Shown: positions 26,002 to 49,762 of the stretch, piece by piece
Layout: each line of letters starts with the position of its first letter
Numbering within the stretch: position 1 is the stretch's first letter
IMG/VR virus record: IMGVR_UViG_3300029993_000005
Location: 62,001 to 126,000 of that record
Length of the DNA: 64,000 nt
Strand: one strand, 5' to 3'
Translations under genes and position numbers: made by a program
The notes under the pieces: generated by a model
Databases searched by the model: none
The model's input: the letters and a program-made list of their open reading frames with translations, nothing else
Told to the model about the DNA's origin: nothing

Positions 26002-26346
26002 ATGACCGAGCAGGAAATTCAATGCGAGATTGACAAAATCGAACCGCAGTATGTTGCGGAAAGTCGCGAGGCAGAGACCCTATCGTTGTTCCGTGGTTCG
26101 CTCGCGGCGCTTCGTACCAAAGTAGAGTCTTTGATAGATTCTTACGATGAAGAAACTCTTATTATGTTCACAGCTGACGGCGAGACTTATGTGTTGAGCA
26201 GCACCGACGCTAGAGCTCACGCTATAAAGCAAATTGAAGACAGAGAAGCTAGAGCGCAGAGAAGAGAACAGAGAAAAGTAAAATACGATCGGGAGCTGTT
26301 CGAAGAACTGAAAGCACGCTTCGAACCGGAGGTTAAAAATGACTGA
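26002..26346 (+). CDS. paralog array member 1
   Basis: LFRGSLAALRTKVESLIDSY...ELFEELKARF. Confidence 0.65.
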   Translation: MTEQEIQCEIDKIEPQYVAESREAETLSLFRGSLAALRTKVESLIDSYDEETLIMFTADGETYVLSSTDARAHAIKQIEDREARAQRREQRKVKYDRELFEELKARFEPEVKND

Positions 26347-26671
26347 CAACATCGATATTTCCAAAACTAGTGCGTCCTCCGTCAAAGGAAAGGTTAAGTT
26401 GACAGGCTTTAGTTATTTCGACGGCTGGGTGTCCGAGCTACAGGACATGGTTAATGGTATTGCTGAGACTTACGGGGCTGACGCCCGCATAGAGTTAACG
26501 GATTACGAAGGCCTTGAAGTATGGGTGGTGACCGCCGCCAAGGCCCGTGAACACGTAAAGAATGAGGGGCTGCGATGCGCAGCCCGTATGAAGGCCCTAT
26601 CCGAAACTCAGGAGCAGAAAGAGCGTGAAATATATGCCGTGCTCCATGCCAAATACGGGGCATCGAAATGA
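26339..26671 (+). CDS. paralog array member 2
   Basis: YFDGWVSELQDMVNGIAETYGADARIEL...LHAKYG. Confidence 0.7.
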   Translation: MTDNIDISKTSASSVKGKVKLTGFSYFDGWVSELQDMVNGIAETYGADARIELTDYEGLEVWVVTAAKAREHVKNEGLRCAARMKALSETQEQKEREIYAVLHAKYGASK

Positions 26672-27006
26672 CCAAACGAAAAGAAAACGAATTGTTAGAT
26701 GTTCATGACATGAGTGCTAGTCTGGTCGTACCTAATAACCGCGTCTACGAACTAGAATATTTTGAGGGCTATCTGTTCGAATTGCAGGAACGCGTAACTA
26801 AGCTGATAACTACGTATGGACCACACGCGCGTATAGAGTTTTCGGCAGACAACGATTCAGCTAATGTTTATATCGCGACGCAGGAACAGATTAAAGTCCA
26901 ACTAGCTAGGGACCAGGAGCGGCACAAACAGCAGGCCAAGCTCACAAAAGAACATGAGCTTCTGCTGCTAAAGAATCTGCAAGCCAAATATGGAACTCCG
27001 AAATGA
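26668..27006 (+). CDS. paralog array member 3
   Basis: YFEGYLFELQERVTKLITTYGPHARIEF...LQAKYG. Confidence 0.7.
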   Translation: MTKRKENELLDVHDMSASLVVPNNRVYELEYFEGYLFELQERVTKLITTYGPHARIEFSADNDSANVYIATQEQIKVQLARDQERHKQQAKLTKEHELLLLKNLQAKYGTPK

Positions 27007-27326
27007 AGTACATCACAATCTTGATCATGGCCTTGTCCTTGTACGGTTGCGATGAACACTACCAAGGGACGGTGAAGGGCAAGCAGTATACGCCTGCAAC
27101 TTATGGGACTGGTATCACGTCAAATGGAAAATTAGTCTCTACATCAACAGACGCCCAATATTCGGTGGAACTCGATGGTGGGGCCTCCGACTTTGAAGTA
27201 GACCACCTATATTACAAAAAGCTAAAGCTAGGCGACGTCATCGACTACCATCGACATTTCTGGACCAGTGAAATGATGATATCCCGAGGTGGTTCGGTCG
27301 TCTTCGATAATGAGAAAACACCATGA
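27003..27326 (+). CDS. predicted lipoprotein
   Basis: signal peptide with lipobox-like LYGC. Confidence 0.6.
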   Translation: MKYITILIMALSLYGCDEHYQGTVKGKQYTPATYGTGITSNGKLVSTSTDAQYSVELDGGASDFEVDHLYYKKLKLGDVIDYHRHFWTSEMMISRGGSVVFDNEKTP

Positions 27327-27511
27327 TCAGTGTCACCGGGCTAGGCCCAGACCACAACCTAATGCTTGAAATCCACAAGGACTCTAAGTCAGAATCCTTC
27401 TTTATCTGGACCAGTGACTATTTCAAGGACTCGAACTTCAGCATCGAAGATTTGACGCGTATACGTGATGCACTTACGCGATTCATTGACTTGGAGACCC
27501 AATTCAAATGA
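27323..27511 (+). CDS. hypothetical protein
   Basis: 62 aa, overlap-coupled. Confidence 0.5.
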   Translation: MISVTGLGPDHNLMLEIHKDSKSESFFIWTSDYFKDSNFSIEDLTRIRDALTRFIDLETQFK

Positions 27512-27963
27512 GCCTCGACTGTTCGCACTGCAAGTTGCCTATCAATCAGGGCGACAATGCAATAATGATGGAAGGTGGTATCGTCCACCAACATTGTAAA
27601 CAAGCTCATGTGGCACGGCTAGAATCCACAATTGACATAAGCAACGTCAGCGCTTCTCTTGTGGACGGGAACGTCGTAATATACGAACTCAATTTATTCG
27701 ATGGTAGCCTGTCTGATTTTCAGACCTTGGTGTCCTCTGTTGTAGAAAAGTATGGGATCGACGCTCGTATCGATTTGACCAACGACTGTGGTTATTTAGA
27801 AGTTTGCGTGGCGACGGCCGAGCAGTGCAGGACGCATGTAAAACATAGGGCAGAGGTCGACAAGCAGCGGGCATTTAATAATGAGGCTGCTCGGCAGCTG
27901 GACGGGGAGAAGTACAAAGCCTTGTTCGATGCAAACTACGCCAAGTACAAGGGACTCGAATGA
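27508..27963 (+). CDS. paralog array member 4 with N-terminal CxxC...HxxC finger
   Basis: LFDGSLSDFQTLVSSVVEKYGIDARIDL...YAKYKG. Confidence 0.7.
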   Translation: MSLDCSHCKLPINQGDNAIMMEGGIVHQHCKQAHVARLESTIDISNVSASLVDGNVVIYELNLFDGSLSDFQTLVSSVVEKYGIDARIDLTNDCGYLEVCVATAEQCRTHVKHRAEVDKQRAFNNEAARQLDGEKYKALFDANYAKYKGLE

Positions 27964-29705: not shown

Positions 29706-29707
29706 GC

Positions 29708-29863
29708 ATGACAGTAGACCACGCGTTTCGTGAGGGGTACGAGGCCTATCACATGGGAATGACTAGCAGCCAGTACGAAGATATTGGGGACACCAAGCCA
29801 CACTACGCGGAATGGTGGCGCGGCTGGAACCAAGCACGAGATGAAGACGAGTACGACGTTTAA
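29708..29863 (+). CDS. Rmf-like (ribosome modulation factor fold) 51-aa protein
   Basis: AFREGYEAY..G.....PHYAEWWRGWNQAR resembles Rmf AxxxGYxAG...W..GW; not in ORF track. Confidence 0.55.
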   Translation: MTVDHAFREGYEAYHMGMTSSQYEDIGDTKPHYAEWWRGWNQARDEDEYDV

Positions 29864-29911
29864 CCTTGCAGGAACGTCGTTGGTTGGTTCAGTACAAAGA
29901 ACAACTGGCGG

Positions 29912-29919
29912 AGTAAATA
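29912..29919 (+). promoter_or_regulatory. AGTAAATA box upstream of tRNA pair
   Basis: 11 nt before the tRNA 5' end. Confidence 0.6.
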
Positions 29920-29930
29920 CAATGCAGTAA

Positions 29931-30007
29931 GGGCCGGTGGCGCAATTGGTTAGCGCGGAGAATTCATAATTCTAAGGTTGTCGGTTCAAGTCCGGCTCGG
30001 CCCACCA
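29931..30007 (+). tRNA. tRNA with CAT anticodon, probably Ile2 (lysidine) rather than Met
   Basis: full cloverleaf, 7-bp acceptor GGGCCGG/TCGGCCC, TTCAAGT T-loop, encoded CCA; C4:G69 and C5:G68 pairs as in bacterial tRNA-Ile2. Confidence 0.9.
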
Positions 30008-30012
30008 CTTTT

Positions 30013-30083
30013 GTCTGCTTCGTCTAACTGGCCTAAGACGCCTGATGTCAGGAAATACTGGTTCGAATCCAGAGCAGACGCCA
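30013..30083 (+). ncRNA. tRNA-Glu-like RNA with truncated anticodon arm
   Basis: acceptor GTCTGCT/AGCAGAC + G + CCA, D-stem GTCT/AGAC, TTCGAAT T-loop; anticodon arm only CCTG-ATGT-CAGG. Confidence 0.75.
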
Positions 30084-30104
30084 CAAACACAACCGAAGGA
30101 CTCT

Positions 30105-30563
30105 ATGGAAATCCCCGCGAAACAAATTCTGGACTTAGCTTTAAGAGCTAATGAGGTTAACGGATATTTTCACAAGAAAATTTGGGACTGCTTTAGTCTA
30201 GAAGAACAGACTCCAGAAAGACTGTACCGGCACCTGCGCGATTTTCAAACTATTGTCCTGGGCCTGCCCCATCGTACTGGAAAAACCACAGCGGTTGCTC
30301 AAGAGTTACTTCCTGGTGATCTTTTAGTACTAAGTAATACCACGTTTATTCAAGAACATCGTAGAGATTACCCACACCAACACCTAGTAGACATATTGCC
30401 CCGTTACTATCTAACCAAAAATTATCTACCAGCCTGGGCCAAAGGCAAGGTCTACAATCGAGTGTTCATTGATACTTGGAGTCTGCCGAGTCCAGCATTT
30501 TTACGTAATGCCATAAAGCTCTTAGGACATAATATCGATCAACAGTTCATAGTGGTGTTCTGA
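30105..30563 (+). CDS. small degenerate P-loop-like protein
   Basis: IVLGLPHRTGKTT and VFIDTW; start refined to ATG 30105 after GAAGGA. Confidence 0.5.
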   Translation: MEIPAKQILDLALRANEVNGYFHKKIWDCFSLEEQTPERLYRHLRDFQTIVLGLPHRTGKTTAVAQELLPGDLLVLSNTTFIQEHRRDYPHQHLVDILPRYYLTKNYLPAWAKGKVYNRVFIDTWSLPSPAFLRNAIKLLGHNIDQQFIVVF

Positions 30564-30597: not shown

Positions 30598-30605
30598 AGT
30601 AAATA
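30598..30605 (+). promoter_or_regulatory. AGTAAATA box
   Basis: intergenic, upstream of glycosyltransferase pair. Confidence 0.55.
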
Positions 30606-30640
30606 AAGGGTGGGACCGTGATAGGTCCCACCCTTTTCTT
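30605..30640 (+). terminator. intrinsic terminator
   Basis: 13-bp perfect stem aaagggtgggacc/ggtcccacccttt followed by T-run. Confidence 0.8.
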
Positions 30641-30661: not shown

Positions 30662-31387
30662 ATGTCCATGGTCTTTGCCAAACTAAATCAGCACCAACGA
30701 GAATTAGCCTATCGAACGGTAAGTGCTTGGTCTTTCTTCTATATCGTCGGTGACTACTTGCTGAACAATAGACCATTATCAATCGTGCGTATGGGTGACG
30801 GCGAACGTTCTATTATAGACCTTTGCATCAAGGCCTCTGCTAACGGTACTACAGTCAATTCACCTATTGATATCTATGATCAGGCAAAGCGTCAGAACAT
30901 GGGCCTTGACGGCTTGACCTACAAAGATTTATACCGTCGATTGCTAAGGGCTGGTAACGACTGTACTTACTTTGCACCCTCGGTGTCAGGTCTCACCCAA
31001 GAAGCTTATTCCTTGCATCATTATTTCCATCAGAGAGAATCTTACATCGATAATTTCTTTGTCAATATTTGGGACTATGAGGCAAAAGCTACATTGTACA
31101 AAGCAGCCGGATCCATACTCTTCATCCACAAGAATCCTAATACTGCGGCCTCAATTACCCGGCAGTGTAAAGACAGATTTAACATCGACGTTGAATTCAT
31201 TCAAATGGATAAATGGCAACAGGCTGAAGCAACAATTGAACAGGCTCGATCCAGCAGTGCCCGCCTAGTCCTGTTTGCTGCGGGTCCCGCATCTAAGTAT
31301 ATTGCATCAGACATCGTGCAAGGCACCAACAAAATTGCATTGGACCTAGGCAATAGCGTTGATGCTTGGACTTTCGGCAACAACTAA
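30662..31387 (+). CDS. GT-D fold glycosyltransferase-like protein
   Basis: LSIVRMGDGE, LVLFAAGPASK, ALDLGNSVD. Confidence 0.7.
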   Translation: MSMVFAKLNQHQRELAYRTVSAWSFFYIVGDYLLNNRPLSIVRMGDGERSIIDLCIKASANGTTVNSPIDIYDQAKRQNMGLDGLTYKDLYRRLLRAGNDCTYFAPSVSGLTQEAYSLHHYFHQRESYIDNFFVNIWDYEAKATLYKAAGSILFIHKNPNTAASITRQCKDRFNIDVEFIQMDKWQQAEATIEQARSSSARLVLFAAGPASKYIASDIVQGTNKIALDLGNSVDAWTFGNN

Positions 31388-31416
31388 AAATTAGCATTAC
31401 GTAAAGTAGAGAAATT

Positions 31417-32517
31417 ATGAATCCTAAAATTCTGTTTGTACTAAAGCACGTCAAGAATCCCTATGACGGATACTCATGGGACCCTAGCGAGACTCTAAAT
31501 ACTTCCTATTCTGAGGGCAAGCCCCCAATGAGCAGCGGGCTTTATAACAGTGCCAGATTTGTTGCCGATATGTTGAGTGCCCATGATATTGAAGTGAAAC
31601 TAGTTACGGTCAAGGACAACAATGCTATTGCTGCTGAGGTTCAATCCTTCGGTGCCGATATAGTCATTATTGAAGCTTTCTGGGTTGTGCCATCTAAATT
31701 TGAAGAACTAAAGACCCAGTGTCCTGACACTAAGTTTGTGATAAGAAATCATTCGGAAACCCCGTTCCTGGCATCTGATGGAATTGCCTTTGACTGGATG
31801 CTGCAGTACGCGGATATGTCAAATACTTATTTAGCCTGTAATTCAAGACGAATGTTTGACGATACGCGATTCTTGGTCCAGACCAATAGCCCAACTATTA
31901 GTCCTCAACAATTAGACTCCAAGGTATCCTATCTGCCTAATTATTATCCGTTGGACTCAACCGAAATTACTAGGGTCCAGGCCTCAGAGTTTGTTGACGT
32001 CGGGTGTTTCGGTGCCATACGTCTACTCAAGAATCATATGACGCAGGCTGTTGCATCCTTGATGTTCGCTAAATCAAGCGGAAAGCGTTTACGGTTCCAT
32101 ATTAACAGCGGTGGTAGCGATCAATCTGGTGAGCAGATACTGAAGAACCTGCAACGCTTGTTTGCCCACTATCCTCAGCATCAGTTAGTTAGTCATGCTT
32201 GGCTTCCGCATCCGCAGTTCAAGGCCCTCTTGCAGTCAATGGACATCATAGTTCAAGTCTCGTTTTCAGAGACTTTCAATATCATAGCCGCCGATGCCGT
32301 GACGTCAGGTGTAGCAACCATTACTTCAGACGAAGTTTCGTGGACCCACAATTGCTTTAAGGCTGATCCAACGGATAGCTCAAACATAGCTAAGACAATG
32401 GAAAAAGCGTATCTCATCAAGAAGGCTATCCCATCATTCAATCCAAGTCTTAAAGGACTGAAGGCTTATAACAAAGAAGCGGTGCAAGACTGGCTATCTT
32501 TTATTGCCTCACACTGA
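31417..32517 (+). CDS. GT-B fold (GT4-like) glycosyltransferase
   Basis: CFGAIRLLKN, DIIVQVSFSETFNIIAADAVTSGVATITS. Confidence 0.75.
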   Translation: MNPKILFVLKHVKNPYDGYSWDPSETLNTSYSEGKPPMSSGLYNSARFVADMLSAHDIEVKLVTVKDNNAIAAEVQSFGADIVIIEAFWVVPSKFEELKTQCPDTKFVIRNHSETPFLASDGIAFDWMLQYADMSNTYLACNSRRMFDDTRFLVQTNSPTISPQQLDSKVSYLPNYYPLDSTEITRVQASEFVDVGCFGAIRLLKNHMTQAVASLMFAKSSGKRLRFHINSGGSDQSGEQILKNLQRLFAHYPQHQLVSHAWLPHPQFKALLQSMDIIVQVSFSETFNIIAADAVTSGVATITSDEVSWTHNCFKADPTDSSNIAKTMEKAYLIKKAIPSFNPSLKGLKAYNKEAVQDWLSFIASH

Positions 32518-42202: not shown

Positions 42203-42691
42203 ATGCCTATCACATTAGAAGCACAGTTGATCAAATGGGGGCTTATAGTTCTGGCCCTTGCAGCCGTCCTATTCGGAGTTTTCGAAATGGGCACTAGCCA
42301 TGGATACAAGCAAGGTTGGGACATCCAGCAGAAAACGATTCAGGCTATGGTTGATAAGCAAAATGCGCAGACAACGGCACAGAATTTGGCAATCACTGGC
42401 TTGGAGCAACAAGCCTCAGATGCGGCGGACAAAGCTAGAGAAGCCAGCAATCTAGCAAGTCAGGCCCGTAGCACGGTGATTACGAAGTACAAAACGCAGT
42501 ATCAGACAATTGCCAGCTCCTGTGGCTGGGACGTTCCAACAGTCCAGGCCATCAATGCAATCATCAACTCCGATCCGGACAATGCTGCAGCAAATGCGCT
42601 AGCCCCTTCTACCCCAGCATCTAGCACAGGAATCATTCCAACACCAAGCCTACCGCTTCCTAGTGCACCAGCTACAACACAGACCAAATAA
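42203..42691 (+). CDS. Rz-like inner-membrane spanin
   Basis: N-terminal TM then coiled-coil, directly upstream of a lipoprotein. Confidence 0.6.
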   Translation: MPITLEAQLIKWGLIVLALAAVLFGVFEMGTSHGYKQGWDIQQKTIQAMVDKQNAQTTAQNLAITGLEQQASDAADKAREASNLASQARSTVITKYKTQYQTIASSCGWDVPTVQAINAIINSDPDNAAANALAPSTPASSTGIIPTPSLPLPSAPATTQTK

Positions 42692-47565: not shown

Positions 47566-48693
47566 ATGTTTGATAAGAACTACGATTGGTACGTCGTTGG
47601 ATCAGGATTTACTGGTGCTTCATTCGCTAGGGCGCGTGCTGATAAAGGTGACAGAGTGCTCGTGGTTGAACAACGCAACCACATCGGCGGTAATGCTTAC
47701 GACTATTGGGAAAATGGACAACTACTAGCCAAGTATGGACCTCACTTGTTTCACACGAATTCACAAAAAGTAGTGGATTTTCTTTCACGATTCACCAACT
47801 GGCGTCCCTACGAGCACCGAGTAGCGGTCGAGGTCGACGGACAGTCTATACCGTTACCCATCAATTATAATTCACTTGAACAGTGGTTTGGAACCGAGGG
47901 TTCTGCTGAAATACTTATGGACCTGCGTGACCACTATGGTTTCGACAAGACAGTAAATATACTGCAGCTCCGTGAGGACAACAAGACAAAGCTCCTTGAA
48001 GCAGTTGCTGACCTTATTTATAAGAAAGTGTTCGAACCTTATAGCCGAAAGCAGTGGGGCTCGCATTTCGAAAATCTAGATTCTTCGGTTATGGGTCGGG
48101 TGCCTATTCGGTTGAATCGAGATGACCGATATTTCACAGACAGTTTTCAAATGATGCCTACTGACGGCTACACCACAATGTTTGAGAACATGCTTAGTCA
48201 TCCTAACATTCAGATTTTGCTGAACGCTGATTACAACGATCTCATGTCTGGACCCCAGCCAGTTCCTGTTTTCTATACGGGTTCGATTGATGAGTATTTC
48301 AATTACAAACTTGGTATCCTTCCCTACAGAACCTTAGACTTCGCCAACGTGACAAGTGAATACTATAAGCAGAGCATAGCTACTATGAACATGCCTCAGC
48401 ATATGCTTTATACACGGGCCACGAACCAGACATTGGTCAACGGGTATAAAGGACAGCCTCAAGTTATTACCTTTGAGTCCGCACGTGAATTTGAACTTGG
48501 TACTTCAGATATTCGATATTACCCGGTACCCACGTCCGAGACACAAAATTTGTATAAAGACTACGATAAATATGCTGAGACCTATCTCAAGGGTTGCACA
48601 CCCGTGCATTTCGCCGGACGTTTGGGTAGCTATCAATACTTGAATATGGATCAGGCCTGTGCTCAAGGTCTACAGCGGGCAGCTACACTATGA
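47566..48693 (+). CDS. glf: UDP-galactopyranose mutase
   Basis: VVGSGFTG, EQRNHIGGNAYD, YGPHLFHTN, RDDRYFTD, PYRTLDF, RYYP, GRLGSYQYLNMDQA. Confidence 0.95.
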   Translation: MFDKNYDWYVVGSGFTGASFARARADKGDRVLVVEQRNHIGGNAYDYWENGQLLAKYGPHLFHTNSQKVVDFLSRFTNWRPYEHRVAVEVDGQSIPLPINYNSLEQWFGTEGSAEILMDLRDHYGFDKTVNILQLREDNKTKLLEAVADLIYKKVFEPYSRKQWGSHFENLDSSVMGRVPIRLNRDDRYFTDSFQMMPTDGYTTMFENMLSHPNIQILLNADYNDLMSGPQPVPVFYTGSIDEYFNYKLGILPYRTLDFANVTSEYYKQSIATMNMPQHMLYTRATNQTLVNGYKGQPQVITFESAREFELGTSDIRYYPVPTSETQNLYKDYDKYAETYLKGCTPVHFAGRLGSYQYLNMDQACAQGLQRAATL

Positions 48694-48872
48694 CTACTAT
48701 TATGAAAGTTCGTCGATTTTCCGGGCGTTCTGAAGAACTATGCACTTTTATCAATAGTCGCCACATGTCTGAAGCTGTGGTGAGCATATCCGTAGTAGCT
48801 AGACTTAGAGATGGAGCTCCTTGGACTTATGATATTTTCTACAAAGAAGAACAAAGTGAGTTTGCCCCATGA
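48690..48872 (+). CDS. hypothetical protein
   Basis: 60 aa, overlap-coupled. Confidence 0.5.
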   Translation: MTTIMKVRRFSGRSEELCTFINSRHMSEAVVSISVVARLRDGAPWTYDIFYKEEQSEFAP

Positions 48873-49762
48873 TCATAAGCCAGGCACACAAATTCGCGTT
48901 TATTCATAATCCAAAGGTGGCTGGTACGTCTGTACGCAAGGCTATTGCCAGCTACCATGATTATCCAGAGCGCTTCTGGCACCAGGGATTCTTGGAGGAG
49001 CATAATCGTGTAGTGGACTTAGCACATATCCCTTACAGGGACCTGGATGCACGCATAAAGACTGCGTTATCCAAGTGCTTCGTCTTTGGGTTTGTTAGGC
49101 ACCCAGTGTTAAGATTTTGGGCCTCTTTAGCAGAGTTCCGTAGGCAGCATGCTGATTGGAACGTTGCTAAGCTAAGTGCTGACGAGCTATTGAATACTTG
49201 GTTGACACCAGCCAACATTCGTTACGACTGGCGGTTTACGCATTTCTGCCCTCAGCATTACTTCTTCTACGAGGGCAACAAGTGCAAGGCCGATTACATT
49301 GGTCGACACGAGGACTTCAAACGCTCGTGGTCCAATGTTCAAAAATTAATTGGCTTGGACCTCGATCCTTTGGACAACAATCGAAGTCGGGGATATCTAG
49401 AACCAGAGGCTCTGGAACCAGCCTCTTACGCACACATACAACGCCTGTACATGAAAGACACGCTGCTCTTTGGTTACGAGCGTTGGGACACTAGTTGCGA
49501 TGCCATTGCTGAAGACGGAAGGCCAAGTCCTCAGTGTCAACCAATTCCCAATACGCATGAACATCGTGTGGAACTTATCCATGTCCCTTATTTGGATGCC
49601 AGCACGCTAGCCGATCTACCTTTGGGCGAACGTGTAGCCTTTCTCGAAACAAGGGTTCGTCAGTACGAACGTGAGTTCAAGCTCAGAAATAAACACCAAG
49701 AAGCTCAAGAAATAGGTGATAAACAATTTTCTTTACCCGATGAACAAGTTCAAGATATATAA
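48869..49762 (+). CDS. sulfotransferase family 2-like protein
   Basis: FIHNPKVAGTS (5'-PSB), FVRHPVLRFWAS (3'-PB), HFCPQH, YIGRHED. Confidence 0.8.
   Translation: MIISQAHKFAFIHNPKVAGTSVRKAIASYHDYPERFWHQGFLEEHNRVVDLAHIPYRDLDARIKTALSKCFVFGFVRHPVLRFWASLAEFRRQHADWNVAKLSADELLNTWLTPANIRYDWRFTHFCPQHYFFYEGNKCKADYIGRHEDFKRSWSNVQKLIGLDLDPLDNNRSRGYLEPEALEPASYAHIQRLYMKDTLLFGYERWDTSCDAIAEDGRPSPQCQPIPNTHEHRVELIHVPYLDASTLADLPLGERVAFLETRVRQYEREFKLRNKHQEAQEIGDKQFSLPDEQVQDI

What the first reader, a model, noticed from the sequence alone, without database searches (positions are those of the whole stretch)
30013..30083. tRNA-Glu-like RNA with no anticodon loop, next to a normal tRNA
Seen: a 71-nt RNA with a perfect 7-bp acceptor stem (G1:C72, U2:A71, G73, encoded CCA), perfect D-stem, canonical TTCGAAT T-loop and a 4-bp T-stem. 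The anticodon arm is 12 nt (CCTG-ATGT-CAGG) instead of 17. Its 5' and 3' ends resemble E. coli tRNA-Glu (GTC...TTCGTCTA...GGCC.A.GAC; GACGCCA). All remaining stems pair without mismatch, which is not typical of a decaying pseudo-tRNA. It lies 5 nt after a CAT tRNA, downstream of an AGTAAATA box. Inference: a non-decoding tRNA mimic, e.g. a decoy for anticodon nucleases or tRNA-sensing defences, a synthetase/ribosome ligand, or an aminoacyl donor for non-ribosomal transfer.
Basis: partly seen in the sequence, partly recalled or inferred. Interest (0 to 1): 0.78.

Follow-up and report, generated by a model that had tools for sequence, protein, structure and literature searches.

The report
Phage tRNA-Glu look-alike lacking an anticodon loop
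A jumbo phage from peat carries, right after a normal tRNA gene, a tRNA-Glu-shaped RNA gene whose anticodon loop is replaced by a short capped stub; similar stub-armed copies occur in a few other phages, so it may be a working non-decoding tRNA mimic rather than a dead gene, but this is not settled.

Summary
Window 30013-30083 folds as a cloverleaf with a 7-bp acceptor stem, a 4-bp D stem, a 12-nt stub in place of the anticodon arm, a 4-bp T stem with a TTCGAAT loop, G73 and an encoded CCA. It lies 5 nt after tRNA-Met(CAU) and downstream of an enriched AGTAAATA box. ARAGORN and Rfam do not call it. It is not an assembly error: the same 71 nt occur in at least seven assemblies.

The host genome is a 230-kb jumbo phage related to phiRSL1 and BcepSauron. 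The comparative evidence is mixed.

For function:
- A distant jumbo phage (L024) has a second tRNA-Glu-like element with the same kind of stub, at the same position before an orthologous P-loop gene. Its stems are fully compensated.
- Contig L037 carries two stub-armed copies.
- A narrow pattern found real elements only in viral contigs.

Against function:
- The nearest relative (L009) lacks the element.
- A 2%-diverged variant has two uncompensated stem changes.
- The Lacusarx copy is clearly decayed.

My estimate is about 0.45 for a functional non-decoding tRNA-Glu mimic and about 0.35 for a recent pseudogene. No RNA data were available.

The parts
29912..29919 (+). AGTAAATA box, a probable phage promoter element 12 nt upstream of tRNA-Met
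   Evidence: 20 sites in the window against 2.5 expected. Most lie on the coding strand, 25-45 nt before an RBS and ATG. Promoter function is inferred from the resemblance to the T4 late TATAAATA box, which I recall from memory.
29931..30007 (+). Canonical tRNA with CAU anticodon and encoded CCA
   Evidence: ARAGORN. Rfam RF00005 at 61.4 bits. It has 0 changes in the 2%-diverged X21 variant. It is 97.7% conserved as a module with the upstream 51-aa ORF in relative L009.
30008..30012 (+). 5-nt spacer (CTTTT). Homology with relative L009 ends here.
   Evidence: Sequence read. The blastn alignment with L009 stops at window 30008.
30013..30083 (+). tRNA-Glu-derived RNA gene without an anticodon loop. 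Acceptor 30013-30019 / 30073-30079; D arm 30022-30039; 12-nt stub 30041-30052; T arm 30058-30072; G73 30080; CCA 30081-30083.
   Evidence: Identical in at least seven assemblies.
30105..30563 (+). 152-aa P-loop ATPase gene starting 21 nt after the CCA, presumably on the same transcript
   Evidence: ORF with a GAAGGA RBS. The AF2 model is a single RecA-like domain with only weak matches to PhoH2 and helicase domain 1. A 36%-identical homologue in L024 is also preceded by a stub-armed tRNA-like.
30605..30636 (+). Strong hairpin plus T-run, the likely terminator of the tRNA-Met / tRNA-like / P-loop unit
   Evidence: 13-bp stem with 8 GC pairs, followed by TCTTTTGTT.

Best explanation
The element is a tRNA-Glu-derived gene for a small non-decoding RNA.

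Proposed pathway (inferred):
- It is transcribed with tRNA-Met(CAU) from the phage's AGTAAATA-type promoter.
- It is released by the tRNA-processing enzymes. RNase P cuts in the 5-nt spacer, and the 3' end is trimmed to the encoded CCA.
- The product keeps the tRNA-Glu acceptor end, the D arm, the 4-nt variable region and the T loop. The anticodon loop is replaced by a capped stub and the acceptor/T helix is one pair short.

Consequences. It cannot read a codon and probably does not enter normal translation. The most likely mode of action is binding: it would occupy a factor that recognises the body of tRNA-Glu. The leading candidate is a host tRNA-directed defence nuclease or modifier, for which a loop-less copy would be an uncleavable competitor.

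Shown: the anatomy, that the sequence is real, its tRNA-Glu ancestry, and the existence of similarly truncated, structurally intact counterparts in other phages. Inferred: transcription, processing, stability and the binding or decoy role.
For: (1) All four stems are perfect, CCA is encoded, and the element sits 5 nt after a conserved tRNA behind an enriched promoter-like box.

(2) L024 is a 223-kb phage contig sharing only 30-36% identical proteins with the window. It has a tRNA(CAU), then Cpn10, then a tRNA-Glu-like element with an 11-nt stub (CCCG-AUU-CGGG), directly before the orthologous P-loop gene (37.2 bits, E 2e-9). Compared with the window, 4 stem pairs changed on both sides, 2 on one side and none is broken. 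The model that found it would also have found a normal tRNA-Glu there, since it scores E. coli gltT at 44.7 bits. The truncation was therefore not selected for by the search.

(3) Viral contig L037 carries two stub-armed copies 0.9 kb apart. They share a GCGCA core in the stub and differ by 3 fully compensated pairs.

(4) On a model-fitted alignment of five elements plus one real tRNA, 98.2% of cells pair, 13 of 19 pairs change on both sides, and the covariation score is 0.807 against 0.256 in shuffles, with 0 of 500 shuffles reaching it.

(5) Three stubs end in GNRA tetraloops (GAAA, GCAA, GCAA). A plain deletion in a pyrimidine-rich Glu anticodon loop would not produce these.

(6) A narrow pattern found tRNA-like elements in IMG/VR only. 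Its 4 hits in 596 Gb of bacterial and archaeal genomes are not tRNA-like.
Against: - The nearest relative, L009, seen in three samples, has the same ORF and tRNA-Met module but no tRNA-like after it.
- The 2%-diverged X21 variant has exactly two changes in the element. Both break pairs (U7>C, G10>A), neither is compensated, and the cloverleaf stops being the MFE fold. tRNA-Met and its leader have none.
- G18G19 is lost in L024, L038 and Lacusarx. L038 has no T-loop consensus. The Lacusarx copy has no acceptor stem and lies among other tRNA debris.
- The elements are no closer to each other than to real tRNA-Glu. The covariation could therefore be inherited from separate functional parents.
- Three of the members were found with a pattern that required a short arm.
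- No RNA run could be listed, so expression and processing are unproven.
- No partner protein is conserved across the members.
Confidence: 0.45

Rival explanations
1. It is a recently inactivated tRNA-Glu pseudogene. A 5-nt deletion inside the anticodon loop and a 1-nt deletion in the T stem killed a phage tRNA-Glu. The stems are still perfect only because too little time has passed. The similar elements elsewhere are independent casualties of the turnover of phage tRNA clusters.
For: - The arm is exactly a 5-bp stem plus 2 leftover loop nucleotides. L024 has 5+1+5 and L037_A has 5+2+5. This is the footprint of a loop deletion.
- There is a second length defect in the T stem (alignment).
- The relative BcepSauron has 9 tRNAs in the syntenic region while the window has one, so tRNA loss is ongoing in this group.
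- L009 lacks the element.
- The X21 variant shows two uncompensated stem changes in 71 nt, about the same rate as the flanking genes. tRNA-Met plus its leader show 0 in 144 nt.
- Lacusarx shows that tRNA-Glu-type debris, including a short-armed piece, does accumulate in phage tRNA clusters.
Against: - It requires independent loop truncations at the same genomic position in two phages that share only about 35% protein identity.
- It requires two more truncations within one 14-kb contig.
- No relative has an intact tRNA-Glu at this site.
- Two indels with no stem substitution is an unusual decay spectrum.
- GNRA-capped stubs are not simple deletion products.
Confidence: 0.35
2. It is a cis-acting processing element. 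The tRNA-like fold serves only as an RNase P or RNase Z/E handle. It separates tRNA-Met from the downstream P-loop mRNA and gives that mRNA a defined, stable end. The released RNA itself has no role.
For: - The element lies between a tRNA and an ORF that starts 21 nt after its CCA. No separate promoter box precedes the ORF, and a terminator follows it.
- The other members also lie shortly upstream of a same-strand ORF.
- Such a role needs only the acceptor and T arms, which would explain why the D-loop GG and the anticodon loop are dispensable.
Against: - In L009 the P-loop genes follow tRNA-Met directly without any such element.
- The invariance of the tRNA-Glu-type D stem and the 4-nt variable region is not needed for RNase P.
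- In dense phage genomes almost any intergenic element is just upstream of an ORF.
Confidence: 0.12
3. It is a chargeable Glu acceptor outside translation. GluRS would aminoacylate the mimic. The Glu-RNA would feed a tRNA-dependent transferase, or would titrate GluRS or Glu-tRNA-using enzymes.
For: It retains G1:C72, U2:A71, U11:A24, G73, CCA and a 4-nt variable region. I recall these as E. coli GluRS identity elements outside the anticodon (from memory, not tested here).
Against: - The anticodon bases are major GluRS determinants and are absent.
- U13:A22 replaces U13:G22.
- CCA and the acceptor identity pairs are not conserved in L024, L037 or L038.
- No Fem/L-F-transferase, LanB-like or synthetase gene was found in the window.
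Confidence: 0.05

Closest known systems
Canonical bacterial or phage tRNA-Glu (E. coli gltT used for comparison)
   Same: Same 5' and 3' ends (GUC...GACGCCA), UC at positions 8-9, a GUCU/RGAC D stem, a GGCC-type D loop, a 4-nt variable region, the UUCGAAU T loop, G73 and CCA. It is the best-scoring tRNA for the element's covariance model.
   Different: There is no 7-nt anticodon loop: the arm is 12 nt, not 17. The T stem is 4 bp with position 65 missing. U13:A22 replaces U13:G22. ARAGORN and Rfam RF00005 do not detect it.
Phage tRNAs that counter tRNA-targeting defences (T5 tRNA-Tyr against PARIS or retron Eco7; anticodon-loop variant tRNAs; PMC11555353, PMC11455837, PMC13096335)
   Same: Both are encoded in or beside phage tRNA clusters, are sporadically distributed among close relatives, and are derived from a host-type tRNA.
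   Different: Those are complete, decoding tRNAs that replace the cleaved host species. This RNA cannot decode and could act only by binding or competition. No link to a defence system was shown here.
Non-decoding tRNA mimics: the tmRNA tRNA-like domain, bacterial and phage YrlA (Rfam RF02553), mascRNA, plant-virus 3' tRNA-like structures
   Same: All have a tRNA-like acceptor/T/D architecture without a functional anticodon, and all are handled by tRNA enzymes (from my own knowledge of these families).
   Different: YrlA has no free CCA end and is joined to a Ro-binding stem. tmRNA carries an mRNA module. Neither is detected here. This element is a free-standing 71-nt cloverleaf clearly derived from one isotype.
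T4 stable RNAs 'species 1 and 2' (rnaC, rnaD) in the T4 tRNA cluster
   Same: They are small stable RNAs of unknown function, co-transcribed and co-processed with phage tRNAs (recalled from memory, not tested).
   Different: They are longer (about 120-140 nt) and are not simple single-isotype cloverleaves. No sequence comparison was made.
tRNA pseudogenes and debris in phage tRNA clusters (for example Sphingobium phage Lacusarx, L035:2364-2637)
   Same: The Lacusarx piece shares the tRNA-Glu D arm, an 11-nt stub, the AAAC variable region and the T arm. It is 78% identical to the L024 element.
   Different: The Lacusarx piece has no acceptor pairing and does not fold as a cloverleaf. The window element has 19 of 19 perfect pairs.

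Membership tests
Canonical tRNA (Rfam RF00005 / ARAGORN definition) | 7-bp acceptor stem with discriminator base and CCA | tested here: met
   GUCUGCU/AGCAGAC, G73 and CCA are present.
Canonical tRNA (Rfam RF00005 / ARAGORN definition) | 5-bp anticodon stem with a 7-nt loop containing U33 and an anticodon | tested here: not met
   The arm is 12 nt (CCUG-AUGU-CAGG), so no anticodon can be placed.
Canonical tRNA (Rfam RF00005 / ARAGORN definition) | 5-bp T stem with a GTTCRAnYC loop, and D loop G18G19 | tested here: inconclusive
   The T loop and the GG are present, but the T stem has 4 bp because position 65 is missing (alignment to gltT).
Canonical tRNA (Rfam RF00005 / ARAGORN definition) | Detected by the family model at its threshold | tested here: not met
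   There is no RF00005 hit even at E<=10. ARAGORN at default settings does not call it. Only a shifted, mismatched fold appears at an 80% threshold.
tRNA-Glu isotype (E. coli GluRS identity set, recalled from memory) | G1:C72, U2:A71, U11:A24, and a 4-nt variable region lacking residue 47 | tested here: met
   All are present in the sequence. Whether they are sufficient for charging was not tested.
tRNA-Glu isotype (E. coli GluRS identity set, recalled from memory) | Anticodon U34 U35 C36 A37, and U13:G22 | tested here: not met
   The anticodon loop is absent, and the pair is U13:A22.
tRNA pseudogene | Relatives keep an intact orthologue while this copy alone is damaged | tested here: not met
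   L009 has nothing at the site. X21 and L024 carry the same kind of short arm.
tRNA pseudogene | Substitutions accumulate without regard to pairing | tested here: inconclusive
   The window copy has 0 mismatches in 19 pairs. The X21 variant has 2 of 2 changes breaking pairs. Distant copies keep their pairing, but this may be inherited from functional parents.
YrlA / Y RNA tRNA-like domain (RF02553) | Match to the family model, with a Ro-binding stem and no free CCA end | tested here: not met
   There is no hit in the window. The element has a free acceptor end with CCA.
tmRNA | tRNA-Ala-like domain plus a tag reading frame | tested here: not met
   ARAGORN finds no tmRNA in the window.
Stub-armed tRNA-Glu-like phage RNAs (group proposed here) | UC-GUCU...RGAC D arm, a 10-13-nt hairpin in place of the anticodon arm, an AAAY variable region, paired acceptor and T stems, and a phage genome context beside tRNA genes | tested here: met
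   The window, L024, L037_A and L037_B meet all of these. L038 meets them partly. Lacusarx lacks the acceptor stem.
Stub-armed tRNA-Glu-like phage RNAs (group proposed here) | Common descent of the truncated state, with expression as a stable RNA | not testable with these tools
   The sequences are too short and too diverged to resolve monophyly. No RNA run could be listed.

The most novel reading that the evidence does not exclude
Some phages may encode a dedicated, uncleavable tRNA-Glu body double. It would be processed like a tRNA but carry a capped stub instead of an anticodon loop. It would neutralise a host factor that docks on the tRNA-Glu core, for example an anticodon-loop tRNase or another tRNA-directed defence effector. 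That would make it an RNA-based anti-defence decoy and a new Rfam-type family, restricted to phage tRNA islands.
Probability: 0.2. Interest if true: 0.85.

Novelty: new variant of a known kind. Interest (0 to 1): 0.62.

Why it matters
tRNA-targeting nucleases are now recognised as a major arm of bacterial immunity. The known phage answers are repair enzymes and replacement tRNAs. A loop-less tRNA body that works by competition would be a third, purely RNA-based answer. It would also explain some of the unannotated 'junk' in phage tRNA clusters that gene finders skip.

If it is instead a pseudogene, the finding still has use. It documents how phage tRNA genes die by loop deletion, and it shows that tRNA finders miss these remnants. 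It also gives a concrete, testable set of six elements in five phage genomes or contigs.

Tried and rejected
- Assembly artefact: rejected. The identical sequence is present in at least seven assemblies, and a gap-free diverged contig spans it.
- Coding sequence: the 172-aa ORF from 30045 is only an upstream extension of the P-loop gene. The real start is 30105 with an RBS, as in the L009 orthologue.
- ARAGORN's relaxed 'tRNA-Arg(CCT)' call: rejected as a shifted fold with mismatched stems.
- Search for an exact parent tRNA: nothing in viral contigs or in 185,579 genomes with the same acceptor and D stem.
- blastn of the 71-mer against phages gave only weak tRNA-Gln and tRNA-Arg hits. Against E. 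coli genomes it gave none.
- Relatives sought through single proteins, and IMG/VR or JGI scans with the tRNA-Met 3' half, returned only the same phage.
- phiRSL1 has no tRNA in the syntenic stretch. BcepSauron's nine tRNAs include none close to the element.
- An RNA-repair link was considered, because L009 and the X21 variant carry an RNA ligase gene just upstream. The window has no homologue of it.
- The P-loop protein as a polynucleotide kinase or tRNA enzyme: not supported. It has a generic RecA-like fold, and its core relatives sit after the primase.
- Further P-loop contexts carried no tRNA-like.
- No RNA-seq run could be listed.
- Literature searches found no description of such elements.

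Full report
**What is there**

Window 30013-30083 (+) reads GTCTGCT TC GTCT AACTGGCCTA AGAC G CCTG ATGT CAGG AAATA CTGG TTCGAAT CCAG AGCAGAC G CCA. All 19 stem pairs are Watson-Crick.

Two refinements matter.
- The 12-nt arm can be written as an intact 5-bp anticodon stem (CCUGA/UCAGG) with only two loop nucleotides left. This is the footprint of a 5-nt deletion inside a 7-nt loop.
- The T stem has 4 bp because the nucleotide at position 65 is missing. The model alignment to E. coli gltT shows this. Acceptor plus T helix is therefore 11 bp instead of 12.

ARAGORN and the Rfam tRNA model do not report the element, even at E<=10. A relaxed ARAGORN run gives only a shifted, mismatched 'tRNA-Arg'. 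The element lies 5 nt after tRNA-Met(CAU) at 29931-30007 and 21 nt before the ATG of a 152-aa P-loop gene. A strong terminator hairpin follows that gene at 30605-30636.

The AGTAAATA box at 29912-29919 belongs to a motif found 20 times in the window against 2.5 expected. Most copies lie 25-45 nt upstream of start codons on the coding strand. I read it as a phage promoter element. That is an inference.

**Is the sequence real, and is it tRNA-Glu-like?**

The identical 71 nt occurs in two IMG/VR contigs, JGI contigs, an ENA assembly and Logan assemblies from different peat samples. Twenty-four DNA runs hold the stretch. An assembly deletion is excluded.

Aligned with real sequences fetched here, the element shares 43 of 69 positions with E. 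coli tRNA-Glu, including both ends and the D arm. A covariance model built from it (R1) gave these scores:

| Target | Bits |
|---|---|
| E. coli tRNA-Glu | 44.7 |
| Phage MD18 tRNA-Gln | 38 |
| E. coli tRNA-Gln and tRNA-Met | about 26 |

The stub's stem (CCUGA/UCAGG) is identical to that of the MD18 tRNA-Gln. The ancestry is therefore Glu/Gln-type, most likely Glu.

**Genome and close relatives**

The window belongs to a 230-kb jumbo phage from peat. Its DNA polymerase is 57% identical to those of Burkholderia phages BcepSauron and BcepSaruman and Ralstonia phage phiRSL1. BcepSauron has nine tRNA genes in the syntenic region upstream of the Dda-like helicase. The window has one tRNA plus this element.

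*Relative L009.* This is the nearest relative found. It has 57% identity in the P-loop protein and appears in three samples. Its upstream 51-aa ORF and tRNA-Met are 97.7% identical to the window's. Homology stops at window 30008, and tRNA-Met is followed directly by two P-loop paralogues with no tRNA-like.

*Variant X21.* Contigs of a 2024 soil metagenome were laid on the window and reveal a variant about 2% diverged. It spans 29707-30275 without gaps, so it has the same short arm. It has exactly two changes inside the element:
- 30019 T>C (U7, partner A66);
- 30022 G>A (G10, partner C25).

Both break a pair, and neither is compensated. With them the cloverleaf is no longer the MFE fold (-19.1 against -23.0 kcal/mol). 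tRNA-Met and its leader have no change in 144 nt. The contig's upstream overhang matches the end of the RNA ligase gene that L009 carries at that place. The window has no homologue of that ligase. Taken alone, these data favour a decaying relic.

**Distant counterparts change the picture**

A profile search with the P-loop protein found a small family. One member, P0007, is 36% identical and lies on a 223-kb phage contig, L024. Several of its neighbouring proteins are 30-36% identical to window proteins.

The gene order in L024 is tRNA(CAU), Cpn10, an uncalled element, then the P-loop gene. Model R1 finds the element at L024:3810-3880 with 37.2 bits, E 2e-9:

GCCCGCG UC GUCU AGCGUUCUA GGAC A CCCG-AUU-CGGG AAAC GC(U)CGG UUCAAAU CCGGC CGUGGGC G.

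It again has a tRNA-Glu D arm and an 11-nt stub, a 5-bp stem with one loop nucleotide left. Compared with the window, 4 stem pairs differ on both sides, 2 differ on one side, and none is broken. R1 scores normal tRNA-Glu even higher than this element. Finding a truncated element at this position is therefore not a product of the search.

Further members came from blastn with the L024 element and from a pattern derived from three of the sequences.
- Two copies lie 0.9 kb apart in viral contig L037, which encodes a terminase and an HNH endonuclease.
  - Copy A has the stub CCUU-GCGC-AGGG.
  - Copy B has an 8-bp acceptor and a stub ending in GC-GCAA-GC.
  - The two share a GCGCA core and differ by three fully compensated pairs.
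- One copy lies in L038, with a 6-bp acceptor, the stub CCC-GAAA-GGG, a non-canonical T loop and an enclosing outer helix.
- One copy lies in Sphingobium phage Lacusarx.

The same pattern hit four places in 596 Gb of bacterial and archaeal genomes. None of them is tRNA-like by R1. None of the elements is called by ARAGORN or by any Rfam family at E<=1.

On a model-fitted alignment of five elements plus one real tRNA:
- 98.2% of cells pair;
- 13 of 19 pairs change on both sides;
- the covariation score is 0.807 against 0.256 in shuffles, with 0 of 500 shuffles reaching it.

**Why this is not conclusive**

- The covariation may be inherited from separate functional tRNA-Glu parents. The elements are no more similar to each other than to E. 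coli tRNA-Glu.
- Three members were found with a pattern that demanded a short arm.
- The Lacusarx copy has no acceptor pairing and does not fold as a cloverleaf. It lies between tRNA-Pro and tRNA-Val among other tRNA fragments, including a second degenerate Glu-like piece. Short-armed debris therefore does arise.
- G18G19 is missing from L024, L038 and Lacusarx.
- The P-loop protein gives no functional lead. Its AF2 model (pLDDT 83) is a single RecA-like domain with weak matches to PhoH2 and to helicase domain 1.
- The P-loop protein's core relatives sit after the primase, where the window has a candidate paralogue at 42203-42691. That paralogue is placed by position only and was not aligned.
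- No tRNA-dependent enzyme was found among about 50 window proteins scanned.
- No RNA-seq run could be listed, so transcription and processing remain inferred.

**Weighing**

For a maintained RNA:
- the same truncation at the same genomic position in two phages that share only about 35% protein identity;
- two truncated, mutually compensated copies in one contig;
- GNRA-capped stubs in three members;
- restriction to viral sequence;
- perfect stems, an encoded CCA and a promoter context in the window copy.

For a relic:
- the deletion footprint of the arm;
- the extra T-stem defect;
- absence from the nearest relative;
- the two uncompensated changes in the sister variant;
- the decayed Lacusarx copy.

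I put about 0.45 on a functional, trans-acting, non-decoding tRNA-Glu mimic. I think competitive binding of a tRNA-Glu-recognising factor, such as a defence tRNase, is its most likely mode, and that mode is entirely inferred. I put about 0.35 on a recent pseudogene, about 0.12 on a cis-acting processing handle for the downstream mRNA, and about 0.05 on a chargeable Glu donor.

**Comparison with known systems**

The element works, if it works, like other non-decoding tRNA mimics: the tmRNA tRNA-like domain, YrlA, mascRNA and viral tRNA-like structures. It also resembles the phage tRNA-based counter-defences described for PARIS, retron Eco7 and Septu (PMC11455837, PMC11555353, PMC13096335).

It is not a member of any of these:
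- it fails the tRNA family models;
- it has a free CCA end, unlike YrlA;
- it has no mRNA module;
- unlike the counter-defence tRNAs, it cannot decode.

Literature searches found no description of anticodon-loop-less tRNA-Glu-like genes in phages. I rate it a new variant of a known kind, pending proof of function.

Noticed in passing
window, 20 sites (e.g. 3837, 5991, 25966, 29912, 33256, 36769, 43053, 53541): (T)AGTAAATA is eight-fold enriched. It mostly lies 25-45 nt upstream of start codons on the coding strand. It is probably this phage's own promoter consensus, reminiscent of the T4 late TATAAATA box. One copy (30598) directly abuts the terminator hairpin at 30605.
   Followed up: partly
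L009:6194-7225, and the 5' overhang of the X21 contig at window 29707: Relatives carry an RNA ligase gene (PF09414) inserted just upstream of the 51-aa ORF and tRNA-Met module. The window has no homologue of it. The stretch around tRNA-Met is a swap site for tRNA- and RNA-repair-related cargo, and homology between relatives breaks exactly at the tRNA's 3' end (window 30008).
   Followed up: partly
window 29931-30007: The CAU tRNA has G1:C72 and C4:G69 / C5:G68. From memory, these resemble determinants of lysidine-modified tRNA-Ile2 rather than initiator tRNA, so 'tRNA-Met' may really be tRNA-Ile(CAU).
   Followed up: no
window 26002-27963: Four consecutive small ORFs (114, 110, 112 and 151 aa) look like paralogues by eye. 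They share a '...YG.(D/H)ARIE(L/F)...' core and Lys/Glu-rich tails. None of the four matched a Pfam or PHROG family where tested.
   Followed up: no
window 42203-42691: A 162-aa ORF directly after the primase occupies the position where distant members of the P-loop family (P0013, P0014, P0015) sit in other phages. The tRNA-adjacent gene at 30105 is therefore probably a duplicated replication accessory ATPase.
   Followed up: partly
L037:10307-10409 (-): Between the two stub-armed elements lies a 103-nt tRNA-like gene with a roughly 30-nt insertion (Rfam tRNA 34.1 bits; ARAGORN silent). All three tRNA-type genes of this contig are therefore non-canonical.
   Followed up: no
L035:2364-2637 (Sphingobium phage Lacusarx, record 66996-67269): This unannotated stretch of the tRNA cluster holds a probable CAU tRNA (Rfam 41.4 bits at 2373-2445), an isolated T-arm/3'-acceptor fragment, the short-armed Glu-like piece, and another degenerate Glu-like tRNA with a 10-nt loop.
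   Followed up: partly
L038:366-480: The L038 element is enclosed by an 8-bp outer helix (UGCGACUG / CAGUCGCA) and has an 11-nt loop in place of the T loop. It may be part of a larger, different RNA.
   Followed up: no
window 30662-32517 and 47566-49762: A GT-D-like and a GT1-like glycosyltransferase lie just downstream of the locus. A UDP-galactopyranose mutase and a sulfotransferase-family protein lie further on. Together they suggest sugar-modifying functions in this phage.
   Followed up: no
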